Assembly (NCBI GenBank): GCA_963924565.1
Contig: OZ004609.1
Coordinates: forward strand, 23,932,001 to 23,996,000
Direction of reading: 5' to 3'
DNA: 64,000 bases
DNA from: Ascidiella aspersa
Taxonomy: Eukaryota
The notes beneath the pieces were generated by a model. That model ran no database searches. It saw only the letters and a list, made by a program, of their open reading frames with translations, and was not told the DNA's origin. Of the stretch, positions 54,801-60,800 are shown in pieces. The translations under genes and the position numbers were made by a program. Numbering within the stretch: position 1 is the stretch's first letter; each line of letters starts with the position of its first letter.

Positions 54801-57800
54801 ATTAGCCTTAGTATAGTAGCACTACGACCACTTGGGGTTAAAATTAAGGTTTATCGGCTCAGGACAAACTCGATCTTTGCCAACATTGTAAAACTTGTAT
54901 TACTATTAAGCCTTTGTGGTGCCTAAACCACTTATACTGATGTTTCTCGCCCATATTGAATTAAAGCTAAAATAATTCTAAAACATTATATGGTGGAAAA
55001 TGCCCAAAAAACGTGTCTATTTGTTTCTGGTAATTGAGTATGTTAAACGGGTAAAAAGGGCGCAAAATAAAAAGGGAGTTAATAATTTGTTGAAGAAGCA
55101 ATCTGCAGACACCAAACACCGGTGAGCACTAAACTTGCAAAAGATCGCAGAAGGTTAACTTAATGAGATAGTATAAGGTTAACCAAATAAGATTAAAGTT
55201 AGGCGAATTTCACGAACCCTTTCCATGAGAGAGCTGACCACTCTGGAGACGCAGTCGGTGATCGACTCCTCAGCAGTCTTCAGCACAACTTCGGGGTCCT
55301 CGGGCGGCTCATATGGCGAGTCGATTCCCGTGAAGCCTGCGACGAGGCGCGAATAAAAGTGTTACTCGAAACCTCGAAACCTCGAAGACAGAATTGCAAC
55401 GTGCTATCAAAATAGGTGTTCGGGAGTTTTGAATGGACCATTTTAGTGCGATTAAAAATAGCATTTAAAATCCTACTATTTTCTCTTGATATTATTTTTA
55501 TTGAGAATACATGGTTTTCAGGTTTGACAAAAAACAGGCGAAACGCCGTAGCCTACTGCATGAGCCTGGCTCGCCAATTTAGATACCTTAAATTGAGGTA
55601 CGAATAGATTGGAGCACCTAAGGGTACAATGATAAGGTTTTAAACCTATTTTGTCTGTATGTAGTTTAGTGAGTGGAGCGATTGACCCGGTATGACCGGG
55701 TTCGTAAATTTAAACTTTACCACGGGTAATCTAATTTTCATTTTGCTATTGCATTTTAGTTAACAAGTAAACGGTTGCATCCAAAAAAATTATTTTACTG
55801 CAATAAGCATATGACACTGTATTGTAGTACTATACGTTCTTCTTATGACCCTTCAAACACGATCAAGGACATTTTTTTAAGCATTTGATAAATACATTCT
55901 ATCGATTAAACACTAACACAAAGCAGCAGCCTTTAAAAAGAATTTGGATTCCCTAAAGCAGGGGTCGGCAACCTACGGCCCGCGGGCCGGATTCGGCCCG
56001 CCAATGTAATTCATCCGGCCCGCCGCCTCTTTGACAAACTAAACACGGGTCCAGTTCAAATACTTTTTACTAATTTTAACTACGCAAATACCAAAAAATT
56101 TCAATTTTCGCGCTTCGCGCGAATGATCTTTCTACGTCCGGCACGTTTTAATACCGTCTTTTAAACTAGATCATTTTAAACCAAGCAAACGTTTTTTTTT
56201 GCGCTTTGTGCCAACACTTAACTGCCTCCCTAAATGTAACTAAACACGTATTTAAAGTGCAAAAAAATCCGCAGTTGTTTGAAAATTGTAATGACACTCA
56301 GTTAACATATGTTGTGCGGCCCGCAAGAGACCTTTCTAAGTTTGGTTTTGGCCCGCGACTAGAAAAAGGTTGCCGACCCCTGCCCTAAAGGCTAAGCCCA
56401 TAGGTCAGACTAATATAGACAAGTTATGTCCTTTTTGAAATCGAATCAAACGTTGAAAGGGGAATACAGTACATTATGGTGTTTGGTACGTCACGGTATG
56501 ACGTAACTTTGTAAAGTCATTTCTAAAAAAAATTTCCAGCCTTCCCCCAGACAAACATCCCACATTCGCCCTTGATAATGAGTACAATCATTTTATTACA
56601 CAACTAATTACCCGCATCCAGTGAATAAGCCTTGCGTTAAATTCGTGATGTTAACAAAACGAGGTGTGTTGGATATAGTAGTAATACATACAGGACACTA
56701 GACACACGTACGACATAAAACGGGTCAAAAAAGTGTGACGTGTAAACTCGAAAGAACCGAGATTGACGTGATGACATTCGTAGTTATTTTGAATGCTTGC
56801 GATCACCCTGAACGATCGCAGTTGGCCAACCTGTGAAATCACAATTTACTATTTACGTTGCATTGACTAGCGTGACCCTCGTACATATATAAAGCGCTCC
56901 AAGCATGTCATATAGAAATGTACCAAAATTGAACTCCTACTGAGCCCCTGTGAAAAAAACATTACAAGCTTTTTGTGGTGCGTCATTTACGCCAGGTGTA
57001 TAATATGTGGCTGTGCGATTTCCGCTCTCTTTGTGTCACGATCACAATAGGACAATTTAGCAAACTAGCAAAACGTTGTTTTAGTGTGCGATGTGTTTCA
57101 GCACGAACACACACAACGTTGCATGTTGTTTCCGAAAACGTTAGTTCACGCTTTTCCAACAGGATGTAATATCGATCGAAAAGCGGCAATGGTATAGAGT
57201 AGACGCCGTAACGTCACTGAATTACAACCGTGTGAACCTCAATTGACAGCAGCCTAGTGACTTTTATATAAACCATCACAGTTGCGAAAACACGTTGTTA
57301 ACACCATAAAAGCCTATATATTACTAATATATCCTGTTTGCAACTGTAACAGCGAAACAATGGCGCAAAAGTACAATCGCCTGGAGGGAAATAACAATAT
57401 CCACGTTTTAAATAAAGGCAGGGTCATTCACAAATGATGCGTTGGTGGTTATCGCCGGAATAAAACAAGACGTCGTGTGATACAGGTGGCGGGTCAAGCA
57501 GGGGGCAAAAACTCGTTCGGTGTGGTGCAGCGCGTACCTTTTATGAGGCCCTGGCGCGCCTTTTTGTAAAGTCCCTTCACATCTCGTCGCTCGCACTCGC
57601 CGATCGGTGTGTCCACGTAAACCTCGATAAACGGCAACTTGCCGACGTTGTGGGCGCCACGGGCCAGGTCGCGGTCCTGCGCACGCGTCACTCACGTTAC
57701 ATTACGCCGGGCGCGTTTTGCGTTTTGCGTTTTGCGTTTTGCACGAACAGCACCAATTCTGGGTATTGGTCAAGAAACGACCCTCTCTCTTACTATGAAA

Positions 57801-60800
57801 AGTTGGCACGGTGCACTGTTTAAGACTGGTGGAAAATGGTTGGGTGCTGAGATACTTATTTACACAGTAAAAATTTATTTGGTAAGTTTGCATAATTTCT
57901 ATTCTAAACAGCCGAATCACTTTTCCTTGTTTTATTATAAATGCCTCAAGAGGCGTGAAAGAACAGCGTTTTTTTATTGTAAACAGCTGGACAAATAACA
58001 AAAAACATGAATAAATGGGAGTCAAATTTGCCCAAGAGAGTTTGGTGTGTTCGTACAACGCAAAAGCACGACATAATTCAAGATTAAAAGGAGCATCGTG
58101 CCACTTCAAACAGCGCATCTATTCCGATTGCAGCGAAGAAATTAACCGACCCCGTGCAAATGCGATTCCGTGCCAAGTAAATCCACGCGAGATGCAACAA
58201 CGGCGAATGGATATCCTATTGCAAACCCAATCGCAGCTCAAATTACCACTTTCTTGGCAGACACACAAACTCCCGTGCAGAATTTAAAACATTGATCGAC
58301 TCCATGCAAATTAAAAGAAAGGACGATCGTCAATTTTTAATCGGCACCGTCTTTGGCAACAGGAAAGGAGATATACGGGCTACGGCTTTAGGCGTGGGCA
58401 GCCTGTATGAATACCTCGTGAACCGGGGTAAAAACACTCTTTGAGGAATTTGCAAGAGAACGACGGGCGAGCTTACCTTTAATCTGTCCGTTCCTGGCCT
58501 TCTTATAGAGGCCCTTCACGTCCCGGGCCTCGCAGACGCCAAGAGGCGTGTTGACGAACACCTCGACGAAGGGCAGGCCCGACTTGCCATGGACGCGGCG
58601 CGCGCTCAGGCGATCCTGAGTTTGGGGGCACGCGGGAAAAAATTACAAACATGCCATGTATGGAAGGTGGCAATTACAGTGTGGAGGCCGATGGTTGGCG
58701 GTGGCTATGCGATCGAGCGTGTTTTAACGAGGCGCGATAATGTCAACTTGACAGGAATTCATCCCATTTGAACTCGAAAAACTGATGATGACCCAAACAA
58801 AACTTTGTCTTTTGTTTAGCGGCCGTAGGAATAGTTTGATATGCAATTTTTTTGGAGAAAGTATGTTTGAAAAAATGAACGCTGACCGCATAGCCTCTTC
58901 CGGATTAAATTATACGGTTAAATTTAAGGTAATGATAGTTTGCACCAAATTAACACATTGCTTTAGGTTTATCGGCAAAATTAAACAATGGCCGAACTCT
59001 TTTTTGGTTAGTAAAAATTACTTTAAAAGCAAATTATTTCACCAAAGAACACCAGGATAATTACGGAACGAAAAATTAGGTTTAAACTGTGACAACTTCA
59101 GGTAAAAAATATACCAATACACAACGGCTAACAATTCTAGAACCAGTAACGTACCTTCCTGTAGGGCGAAATAAACGAAACAAGGCACACGACGCCGGCA
59201 TCGGCAAAGAGTTTTGCCACTTCGCCGATTCGCCGGATGTTCTCTTCACGATCTTTCGGCAGAAAGCCGAGATCCTGCAAAATAGAGCGATGTTAAATGT
59301 CAGAAAATGTAATGCGAGCATACCATGTCCTACGCAAGTTTTTGGGATGCGGAGGCACGATATTGGTGTGATTAAGTTTGTTTCAAGAAATTAAACAAAG
59401 AAGTATTTTACTGTTGGATCCGACAATACAGCACTAAGAAGGCCTTCATAACAAACGGTGCCATGGGTCATAACAAACGGTGCCATGGGTCACATAAACG
59501 CGGCTTCGGCTGTATACAGTTAACAAATATACACACGACTATATACGGCTAAACAAAAGTGGTAACATTGGATTTCATACATTATTTATTCATCCCTAAG
59601 GATAAATTAATAAATAATAAATATTATAGTAATATCCTAAAGTGTAGCACCAGCCCTTCTTAATAAAATGACGAACCCAAACATTGCTTTATCGACCCAT
59701 CGAACAAGCACAGGCTTTAACAGATTGTAAGAGTTAGTCATGTCTACTTGTGTCAACTTCAATTTAATTGTAAAACTTCGATACGCATACCGTATTTGTC
59801 TGATGTCACAGTACAAGTGGTACCATAACAAAACGATAAAAAATGGGTGTCTTACAAATAGTTCTTAAATTAGTGAGCCCATGATTTGTAAGAGCCCTTC
59901 AACAACATTTTAATTGACAAAAATTTTATGAATGTCGCCTTTAAAAACAACCACACGAAAGGCGTAGACAAATCGGTTTCACTTTCACGTAATCCAATCT
60001 ACAGGCAGGACTACGCAAACACGCTCCCTGTTAACCTTTGCGAATTCAATTACAATACAACTGCGAGCCATTAGGACGCCGGCGGGGCGAAAGACACCGA
60101 CTCGCCAGACGGCATCGGATGACAATTAACCGGTTTATATGTCCGCTCTGAGAAGACAGGTCAGTTTAGATGCAGGCGTCAGGGCAGGTTAAAATGATAG
60201 ACGCAAGGTTTTTGCCAACACTCAAGCCAAAGTGGGAAATACCTTGTTTAAACCGTGTCGAATGTTGTCGCCGTCCAAGCTGTAGGCGGGAATTCCTTTC
60301 GAGCACAAATACTCTTCCAGTTTCATGGAGAGCGTGGATTTGCCTGCACCGGACAGACCTAGAAGGTTTCCAAATACGAATGGTTATATTACGTCCGTTT
60401 GTCTACTTTATGGTAATTAAACCGTAAAAAATGCCTTTACGTTCTTACACCCGCTTTTGAACAAAAATAAATTGCCCCACTCATTTTAAATGCTTTACTA
60501 TATTTGGATATTTTCTGACAACTGACAACCATTTTAATCCTTAACATAAAGATAAAAAAACGAGCAACTTAACGACTGGACGGCGCACACCGTCCATAGA
60601 GTAATTGATGATTGTGATTTGTGACATATCAAAATTTCGTGCAAAGCACTTCCATTTTTTTTCACGATTAACGTGTCCCCCGCTAGCTGCAAGCAGCCTG
60701 CAACATATACAAAAAAAAATTCCTACCAGTAAACCAAATGGTACATCCCCGGAATCCGCCCCTGGTTCCCATGACCTGACCTCTCTTGTCACGTGAAACA

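What the first reader, a model, noticed from the sequence alone, without database searches (positions are those of the whole stretch)
57538..58615. Tandem duplicated, mutually exclusive exons in the PAPSS APS-kinase domain
Seen: two 139-nt exons with identical phases (0 to 1) and intact splice sites encode the same segment, with 30 of 46 residues identical. [11 protein letters not shown] is invariant despite many synonymous differences, so both appear to be under selection. Including both or neither would frameshift. Differences include [13 protein letters not shown] versus [13 protein letters not shown]. Established: this segment covers the beta-strand and lid region around the ATP/APS site of APS kinase. 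Inference: one gene makes two kinetically different PAPS synthases by splicing, functionally paralleling vertebrate PAPSS1/PAPSS2.
Basis: partly seen in the sequence, partly recalled or inferred. Interest (0 to 1): 0.75.

Follow-up and report, generated by a model that had tools for sequence, protein, structure and literature searches.

The report
Duplicated alternative lid exon in PAPSS
This animal's only gene for the enzyme that makes the cell's sulfate donor carries two old, intact copies of one exon, of which only one can be used per transcript; RNA shows the first copy in use, and the second is kept by selection but was not seen in RNA.

Summary
On the minus strand, exons 58615-58477 (A) and 57676-57538 (B) are both 139 nt. 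Both have AG/GT splice sites and the same phase, and both match positions 88-132 of the APS-kinase Pfam profile. They are 30/46 identical in protein and 84/139 in DNA, and they are the only two copies in the 308-Mb genome.

Differences pile up at third codon positions (14/11/30), and synonymous sites are saturated. Using both exons, or neither, gives an early stop in exon 5.

A relative's contig (P0001) carries the same A-then-B pair, with type-specific residues kept in each copy. So B has been held by selection on its protein sequence.

RNA evidence is one-sided. The exon 3-A junction is seen in two RNA-bearing runs. No junction to B was listed, and B sits at intron-level depth. B also has the weakest polypyrimidine tract of five acceptors.

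Best reading: a mutually exclusive pair from tandem exon duplication, with A as the default and B a minor or tissue-restricted alternative lid of APS kinase.

Different kinetics and a PAPSS1/PAPSS2 parallel are untested. The known PAPSS1/2 stability residues lie outside this exon.

I found no paper describing this pair. The scan has noted other such exon pairs in this genome, in other genes.

The parts
59155..59274 (-). Constitutive exon 3 (120 nt, phase 0 to 0). It encodes DLGF...ISPYRK, APS_kinase profile positions 48-87, with donor AAG|GTACGT.
   Evidence: Joints exon 2-exon 3 (14 reads) and exon 3-exon A (4 reads) in X4, plus the spliced X3 contig. Pfam 55.1 bits. Sequence.
58616..59154 (-). 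Intron between exon 3 and exon A (539 nt, GT..AG).
   Evidence: Joint 58614/59154 'cut +1', ends CT..AC on the + strand: 4 reads at 4 starts in X4 and a contig of depth 120.4 in X3.
58477..58615 (-). Exon 4A (139 nt, phase 0 to 1). This is the default copy: [46 protein letters not shown]. It has a good pyrimidine tract (14/20) and donor GTAAGC.
   Evidence: Spliced to exon 3 in X4 and X3; the X3 depth bin is 84.1. A-type clade of 5 rows, SH-aLRT 96.
57677..58476 (-). Intron between A and B (800 nt), single-copy in the genome. It is too long for steric exclusion of the two exons.
   Evidence: Own-genome DNA search gave 1 match. The relative P0001 has about 209 nt here, with no similarity to this intron.
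57713..57742 (-). Heptamer repeat (GCGTTTT on +, CAAAACG on the RNA strand), 4.3 copies, lying 37-66 nt upstream of B's acceptor. Copy number is polymorphic.
   Evidence: TRF score 60, 100% matches. '57713 left out 7' in contigs of X1, X2 and X3 (table 4).
57538..57676 (-). Exon 4B (139 nt, phase 0 to 1). This is the alternative copy: [46 protein letters not shown]. It has a weak pyrimidine tract (8/20) and donor GTACGC.
   Evidence: Ortholog B' in P0001 is 36/46 identical. No RNA junction was listed; the X3 depth of 5.34 equals the intron background.
55337..57537 (-). Intron between B and exon 5 (2201 nt). It holds a very high-copy repeat at about 55958-56383.
55218..55336 (-). Constitutive exon 5 (119 nt, phase 1 to 0): (G)[39 protein letters not shown]. 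It carries the premature stops if both or neither of A and B are used.
   Evidence: X3 depth 39.6-44.8. Matches P0358 residues 186-227.

Best explanation
The single PAPS synthase gene of this animal (minus strand, about 60832 to 45876) had its fourth coding exon duplicated in tandem long ago. The two copies now behave as a mutually exclusive pair. Each is 139 nt, so a transcript keeps the reading frame only if it contains exactly one of them. Transcripts with both or neither meet an early stop in exon 5 and would be removed by nonsense-mediated decay (inferred).

Exon A has strong splice signals and is the default. Exon B has a purine-rich acceptor region and is probably included only where an activator is present (inferred).

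The swap replaces a helix, a beta-strand and the first 23 residues of the mobile lid of the APS-kinase domain. The catalytic Cys-x-x-Arg-x-x-Lys core stays the same, but its neighbours change: V27/A30 in A against E27/R30 in B, plus L25I, F20Y, N42Q and Q44L. The likely effect is a different lid closure, and so different nucleotide binding, APS inhibition or stability (inferred, untested).

Shown: the anatomy, the frame logic, selection on both copies, the pair in a relative, and use of A. Not shown: use of B in RNA, or any functional difference.
For: Anatomy and frame.

Same domain segment: both exons hit PF01583 positions 88-132 and human PAPSS1 138-183.

Single gene: only these two copies exist in 308 Mb.

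Selection on both copies:
- Differences by codon position are 14/11/30.
- pS is 0.79 (saturated) against pN 0.27, and 21 of the 30 codons for identical residues differ.
- With 55 random differences, mean protein identity is 15.2/46 and the maximum is 26 in 200,000 trials, against 30 observed.

The pair in a relative: P0001 reads A' (3 differences in 43), an intron-coded stretch of 69 residues with no match here, then B' (36/46). Cross pairs are only 63-67% identical, so the duplication predates the split. B-only residues K13, Y20, I25, E27, R30 and Q42 are kept in B'. A-only residues F20, L25, V27, N42 and Q44 are kept in A' (read).

B-type lids work in mRNA elsewhere: ten spliced transcripts group next to the ascidian-like P0358 when exon 4 is masked (SH-aLRT 89). 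They carry B-like segments, and 7 of 10 have ECERRD.

A is used: exon 3-A joints in X4 and X3, and the transcript P0358 of a relative is A-type.
Against: No RNA support for B. In X4 (about 6% of the run read) the listed joints are exon 1-2 with 7 reads, exon 2-3 with 14 and exon 3-A with 4, and none to B. In X3 the B bin (5.34) equals the flanking intron bins (4.62, 5.07), while A is at 84.1.

The one ascidian-like transcript in the protein database is A-type.

B's acceptor has the poorest pyrimidine tract of the five checked, 8/20 against 12-15/20.

B changes faster than A between the two species, 10/46 against 3/43 (Fisher p = 0.07).

The pair is confirmed in only one other species, from one unnamed 991-nt contig whose DNA I could not fetch.

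Limits on the negative RNA result: 43 joints were not shown, reads resembling human DNA are dropped without notice, and contigs drop rare forms.
Confidence: 0.65

Rival explanations
1. B is an unused relic of the duplication, a pseudo-exon that is no longer spliced and is decaying slowly.
For: No junction to B and intron-level depth in X3. Weak pyrimidine tract. Faster protein change than A.
Against: Synonymous sites between A and B are saturated while pN is 0.27. No random placement of the same 55 differences reached 27/46 identity. B is open, keeps AG and GT, and is 36/46 identical to B' in a relative whose flanking intron shows no similarity and is a quarter of the length. Its lid half differs from B' at only 2 of 23 positions (G26S, L44I; read).
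Confidence: 0.12
2. B is a regulatory 'poison' exon. It is included together with A to shift the frame and send the mRNA to decay, which tunes PAPSS output. It would not make a second protein.
For: A+B inclusion gives a stop 8 codons into exon 5, upstream of many junctions. B is weak and could be added variably.
Against: Selection on a poison exon acts on the RNA, not on the codons. Here change is concentrated at third positions (14/11/30), and the residues kept are the catalytic lid motif and type-specific lid residues. Read in the +1 frame B has no stop of its own, so its sequence is not shaped to terminate. No A-B joint was listed.
Confidence: 0.1
3. The pair is an assembly or haplotype artefact.
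For: None found.
Against: The copies differ at 55 of 139 bases. One X1 contig spans both (table 8). A relative has the same arrangement.
Confidence: 0.01

Closest known systems
Mutually exclusive exon pairs made by tandem exon duplication (tandem duplicated exon substitutions; reviewed in PMC9741552 and PMC9013439, of which I saw abstracts and term searches only)
   Same: Adjacent homologous exons of equal length and phase. Both have canonical splice sites, exactly one is needed for the frame, the origin is old, and the change sits in a functional segment of the protein.
   Different: I found no PAPSS case: 'PAPSS' occurs 0 times in the main text of either paper, and their supplements were closed. 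Use of the second exon is not yet shown here.
Vertebrate PAPSS1 and PAPSS2 gene paralogs
   Same: Two versions of the same bifunctional enzyme that differ in the APS-kinase domain. Invertebrates are described as having one PAPSS gene (PMC3366831 passages), as does this genome.
   Different: The vertebrate pair are whole-gene duplicates that differ along the whole protein. The reported stability determinants (Thr-29, Met-70, Thr-85 of PAPSS1) lie outside the segment swapped here. A and B are not orthologs of the two genes: the score differences are about 3 bits, and the vertebrate rows group apart from both A and B.
PAPSS2 a/b splice forms of vertebrates
   Same: Alternative splicing within a PAPS synthase gene.
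   Different: That case is an extra exon of about 5 residues without clear conservation (PMC3366831 passage). It is a cassette exon, not a swap of a homologous 46-residue catalytic segment.
Other duplicated alternative exon pairs noted by this scan in the same genome (for example s1-788688 myosin light chain, s1-801577 nicotinic receptor, s1-792893 NTE)
   Same: The same kind of anatomy in the same genome. Some are said to be annotated with both forms in other sea squirts.
   Different: Different genes. None concerns PAPSS, and I did not test those notes.

Membership tests
Mutually exclusive exon pair from tandem exon duplication | Two neighbouring exons that are homologous and have the same length and phase | tested here: met
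   139 nt each, phase 0 to 1, 30/46 residues identical, 800 nt apart. E 1.1e-12 in the own-genome search.
Mutually exclusive exon pair from tandem exon duplication | Both copies have usable splice sites and open frames | tested here: met
   AG and GT at both exons, no stops. B's pyrimidine tract is weak, 8/20.
Mutually exclusive exon pair from tandem exon duplication | Using both or neither destroys the product | tested here: met
   Stop 8 codons into exon 5 with both in; stop after 18 codons with both out.
Mutually exclusive exon pair from tandem exon duplication | Transcripts exist with each exon, and none with both | tested here: inconclusive
   A: 4 junction reads in X4, one contig in X3, and the transcript P0358 in a relative. 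B: no junction listed and intron-level depth. The table was truncated (43 joints not shown), only about 6% of X4 was read, and reads resembling human DNA were filtered out.
Mutually exclusive exon pair from tandem exon duplication | Both copies kept by selection in other species | tested here: met
   P0001 holds A' and B' in the same order, and orthologous pairs are closer than cross pairs. This rests on one species. P0006/P0415 may be a third B-type copy.
Bifunctional PAPS synthase (N-terminal APS kinase, C-terminal ATP sulfurylase) | APS_kinase, PUA_2 and ATP-sulfurylase domains in this order on one strand | tested here: met
   Exon by exon: PF01583 at 59274-57538, PF14306 at about 53072-52611, PF01747 at about 49666-47536. 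The open frames are listed. I built and searched no joined model.
Bifunctional PAPS synthase (N-terminal APS kinase, C-terminal ATP sulfurylase) | Lid residues needed for catalysis (Cys, Arg on the adenine, Lys on the gamma-phosphate) are present in both exon versions | tested here: met
   C28, R31 and K34 are identical in A and B. I mapped them by motif and spacing to Cys556/Arg559/Lys562 of M. tuberculosis CysC (PMC4373884 passages) and to R158 of PAPSS2. The mapping is my inference.
Orthologs of vertebrate PAPSS1 (B) and PAPSS2 (A) | Each exon groups specifically with one vertebrate paralog | tested here: not met
   A: 59 bits to PAPSS2 and 55.6 to PAPSS1. B: 49.4 to PAPSS1 and 46.6 to PAPSS2. 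In the 46-column tree the vertebrate rows form their own groups away from both.

The most novel reading that the evidence does not exclude
The B-type lid (ECERRD...G[ILV]IK) is the older lid of this animal's wider lineage, and the A-type (VCExRD...GQIK/GEIK) is a later copy that became the default. The gene now switches, by cell type or stage, between two APS-kinase lids. These differ at the residues flanking the essential Cys and Arg, so they differ in lid closure, APS substrate inhibition or nucleotide-dependent stability. One gene would thus achieve by splicing what vertebrates achieve with PAPSS1 and PAPSS2.
Probability: 0.25. Interest if true: 0.65.

Novelty: new member of a known kind. 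Interest (0 to 1): 0.45.

Why it matters
PAPS is the only sulfate donor for sulfating proteoglycans, proteins, steroids and xenobiotics. The APS-kinase step limits its supply. The literature I read treats invertebrates as having one PAPS synthase with one set of properties (PMC3366831 passages).

If exon B is used, a close invertebrate relative of vertebrates makes two enzymes from one gene, and they differ only in the kinase lid. That would be a clean natural experiment: 16 substitutions in 46 residues on an identical background. It could show how the lid sets APS inhibition and the ligand-dependent stability studied in the human enzymes. It would also be a second, independent route to isoform diversity in sulfation.

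If B is never used, it is an unusually well-kept dead exon, and that would need its own explanation.

Tried and rejected
- **DNA of the relative.** I could therefore compute no dN/dS for B against B' and compare no introns at the DNA level.
- **Metagenome scan with the A-type ORF P0045.** It returned 80 loci. None is a close relative (best 68% identity), and a tblastn with A and B found no locus with a tunicate-like pair.
- **The search for homologous proteins with exon B alone.** 70 hits, best 74% identity, and no closer B-type exon or spliced fragment.
- **Same tool with P0001 and P0159.** Among the 120 listed each time there was one ascidian-like spliced transcript, and it is A-type (P0358). 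There was no ascidian-like B-type transcript.
- **Exon depth as a measure of use: rejected.** In X4, A has only 2 reads at sites where exon 3 has 22, although A is certainly spliced. The tool warns that reads resembling human DNA are dropped.
- **Competing RNA structures (docking and selector sites).** The inverted-repeat scan of 55337-59154 gave 28 pairs. The longest is 28 nt at 75% complementarity, and the only perfect one is the terminal repeat of a transposon-like element. Nothing was convincing without a second species' DNA.
- **Steric exclusion: rejected.** The A-B intron is 800 nt here and about 209 nt in the relative.
- **Assignment of A and B to PAPSS2 and PAPSS1: rejected**.
- **Literature.** The searches gave no paper on alternative or duplicated exons in an invertebrate PAPSS. 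'PAPSS' occurs 0 times in the main texts of PMC9741552 and PMC9013439. Supplements were closed. The exon catalogues of those two papers and supplemental Fig. S8 of PMC3366831 (23 discriminating positions) may bear on this, and I could not see them.
- **Taxon.** I did not test the label 'sea squirt'. It comes from earlier notes of the scan.

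
Full report
**What is there**

The window's minus strand carries a complete bifunctional PAPS synthase gene. Its start codon is at 60832, and the last coding frame ends near 45876. Taken exon by exon, Pfam finds:
- APS_kinase in exon 3 and in both copies of exon 4;
- PUA_2 at about 53072-52611;
- ATP-sulfurylase at about 49666-47536.

Read joints fix the first exons:

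| Exon | Coordinates |
|---|---|
| exon 1 coding part | 60832-60727 |
| exon 2 | 60358-60243 |
| exon 3 | 59274-59155 |

Two 139-nt exons follow, A (58615-58477) and B (57676-57538), and then exon 5 (55336-55218).

**The observation**

A and B each sit between AG and GT. Each translates in the same phase to 46 residues plus one base. They share 30/46 residues and 84/139 bases.

Both align to the same part of the APS-kinase profile, positions 88-132 of 152, at 55.1 and 50.6 bits. Both align to residues 138-183 of human PAPSS1.

These are the only two copies of the segment in the 308-Mb assembly, so the animal has one PAPSS gene. One contig of a DNA-like run spans both copies (table 8).

**Only one can be used**

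- If A and B are both included, B is read in the +1 frame. It stays open, and a stop follows 8 codons into exon 5.
- If both are skipped, a stop follows after 18 codons of exon 5.

The intron between the two exons is 800 nt here and about 209 nt in the relative. Exclusion therefore rests on the frame and, by inference, on mRNA decay. It does not rest on crowding of splice sites. I found no convincing competing RNA helices.

**Both copies have been under selection for protein sequence**

- The 55 base differences fall 14, 11 and 30 on codon positions 1, 2 and 3.
- The proportion of synonymous differences is 0.79, which is saturated. The non-synonymous proportion is 0.27.
- 21 of the 30 codons for identical residues differ.
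- 8 of the 11 codons of [11 protein letters not shown] differ.
- When the same 55 differences are placed at random, identity averages 15.2/46 and never exceeded 26 in 200,000 trials.

A copy left to drift since so old a duplication would not look like this.

**The pair exists in another species**

The exhaustive profile-free search with exon B returned P0001, a 168-residue open frame from one unnamed 991-nt contig. It reads, in order:
- an A-type exon with 3 differences in 43 residues;
- 69 residues of intron read-through with no similarity to this window;
- a B-type exon, 36/46 identical to B.

Cross comparisons are 63-67% identical. The residues before B (AQ) and after each exon (G) fit conserved AG and GT sites.

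Residues that distinguish the types are kept within each type:
- K13, Y20, I25, E27, R30 and Q42 in B and B';
- F20, L25, V27, N42 and Q44 in A and A'.

In the lid half (positions 24-46), B and B' differ at only two positions. B changes faster than A overall, 10/46 against 3/43 (p = 0.07). That would suit a less used exon.

**Wider kin**

In a tree of the 46-residue segment (92 rows, weak by nature), A, A' and three more sequences form a clade with SH-aLRT 96. One of the three is the spliced transcript P0358. B, B' and P0006 fall with a set of spliced transcripts of unnamed taxa (support 86).

With exon 4 masked, those ten transcripts are the nearest group to P0358 (support 89, 37 rows). P0358 has a long branch there. 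Seven of the ten carry ECERRD, as B does.

So a B-like lid is the working lid in mRNAs of related lineages. B may be the older form. The taxa are not named, so this remains an inference.

**RNA**

One RNA-seq run of the same species label (X4, raw reads, about 6% of it read) and one run kept as contigs that clearly holds spliced RNA (X3) were laid on 55100-60950.

- **X4 joints:** exon 1-2 with 7 reads, exon 2-3 with 14 reads, exon 3-A with 4 reads.
- **X3:** one contig joins exons 1-2-3 (depth 92.3) and another joins exon 3 to A (depth 120.4).
- **B:** no joint to or from B was among the 15 listed, and 43 more were not shown.
- **X3 depth:** the bin holding A is 84.1 deep. The bin holding B is 5.34, the same as the introns beside it (4.62, 5.07).

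A is therefore the main form in both samples. The power to exclude B is low:
- the X4 joint counts are small;
- reads resembling human DNA are dropped, so A itself shows only 2 reads at sites where exon 3 shows 22;
- contigs lose rare forms;
- the tissues are unknown to me.

**Why B may be rarely used**

In positions -23 to -4 of its acceptor, B has 8 pyrimidines of 20. The other four acceptors checked have 12-15.

Just upstream lies a perfect 4.3-copy heptamer repeat whose copy number varies among the runs. Whether it binds a splicing factor is unknown.

**What the swap would do**

By the PDB alignment, plus my PAPSS1-minus-10 offset, the exon covers PAPSS2 residues 128-173. The lid is given as P151-S180, with R158 stacking on the adenine of ATP/ADP (passages of PMC8710738).

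In the M. tuberculosis kinase the lid Cys556 is needed for lid closure, Arg559 contacts the adenine and Lys562 contacts the gamma-phosphate (passages of PMC4373884). By motif and spacing these are C28, R31 and K34 of the exon, and they are identical in A and B.

The differences flank them: V27/A30 in A against E27/R30 in B. They also touch the strand (F20Y, V17I) and the end of the lid helix (N42Q, Q44L).

A change in lid dynamics is the most likely effect, but nothing here measures it.

**Compared with what is known**

This is the known kind of alternative splicing by tandem exon duplication, in a gene for which I found no report (supplements closed).

It is not a counterpart of the PAPSS1/PAPSS2 split in any tested sense. 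The stability-setting residues of that pair lie elsewhere in the protein. Neither exon groups with one paralog.

The scan's earlier notes list several other duplicated exon pairs in this genome, in other genes. Such pairs seem common here.

**Verdict**

- The finding is a new member of a known kind.
- The open point is direct evidence that B is spliced in.

Noticed in passing
window 55958-56383 (intron between exon B and exon 5): A roughly 426-bp element bounded by perfect 17-nt inverted ends (GCAGGGGTCGGCAACCT / AGGTTGCCGACCCCTGC). Summed contig depth in the DNA-like runs is above 100,000, against about 60-100 for the flanks. Reads lie on both strands in the RNA run. It looks like a very high-copy miniature transposon.
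   Followed up: partly
window 57713-57742: A perfect (GCGTTTT)4.3 repeat lies 37-66 nt upstream of exon B's acceptor. Contigs of X1, X2 and X3 all lack one 7-nt unit relative to the assembly. A role in splicing of B is possible but untested.
   Followed up: partly
window 57648-58235: RNA run X4 has same-strand reads (mean depth 1.7-3.1) over the part of the single-copy A-B intron just upstream of exon B. It has none in 58236-58431, just downstream of exon A. There are too few reads to tell pre-mRNA from an extended or alternative exon.
   Followed up: partly
window 57618: Contigs of X1, X2 and X3 read A where the assembly has T. By my reading of the codon this changes Tyr20 of exon B to Phe, the residue found in exon A. 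The two variants listed in exon A (58505, 58517) are both synonymous (table 3; the codon reading is mine).
   Followed up: partly
window 58303-58308: One TGCATG on the RNA strand lies about 168 nt downstream of exon A's donor. I recall this as the Rbfox-type motif. About 0.2 such hexamers are expected by chance in 800 nt, so it may mean nothing.
   Followed up: no
protein P0001 (relative's contig): In the relative the whole intron between A' and B' is open in frame, 69 codons without a stop. This may be chance, and I could not look at the DNA.
   Followed up: no
proteins P0006 and P0415 (two large unnamed contigs, 0.8 and 2.6 Mb): An exon-4 open frame with mixed characters: DRDGAR and ARQGIIKG as in B', but VEVFVDTP and VCEK as in A-type, and a GTAC-like donor as in B. 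It may be the B copy of a third species, or an unduplicated exon.
   Followed up: partly
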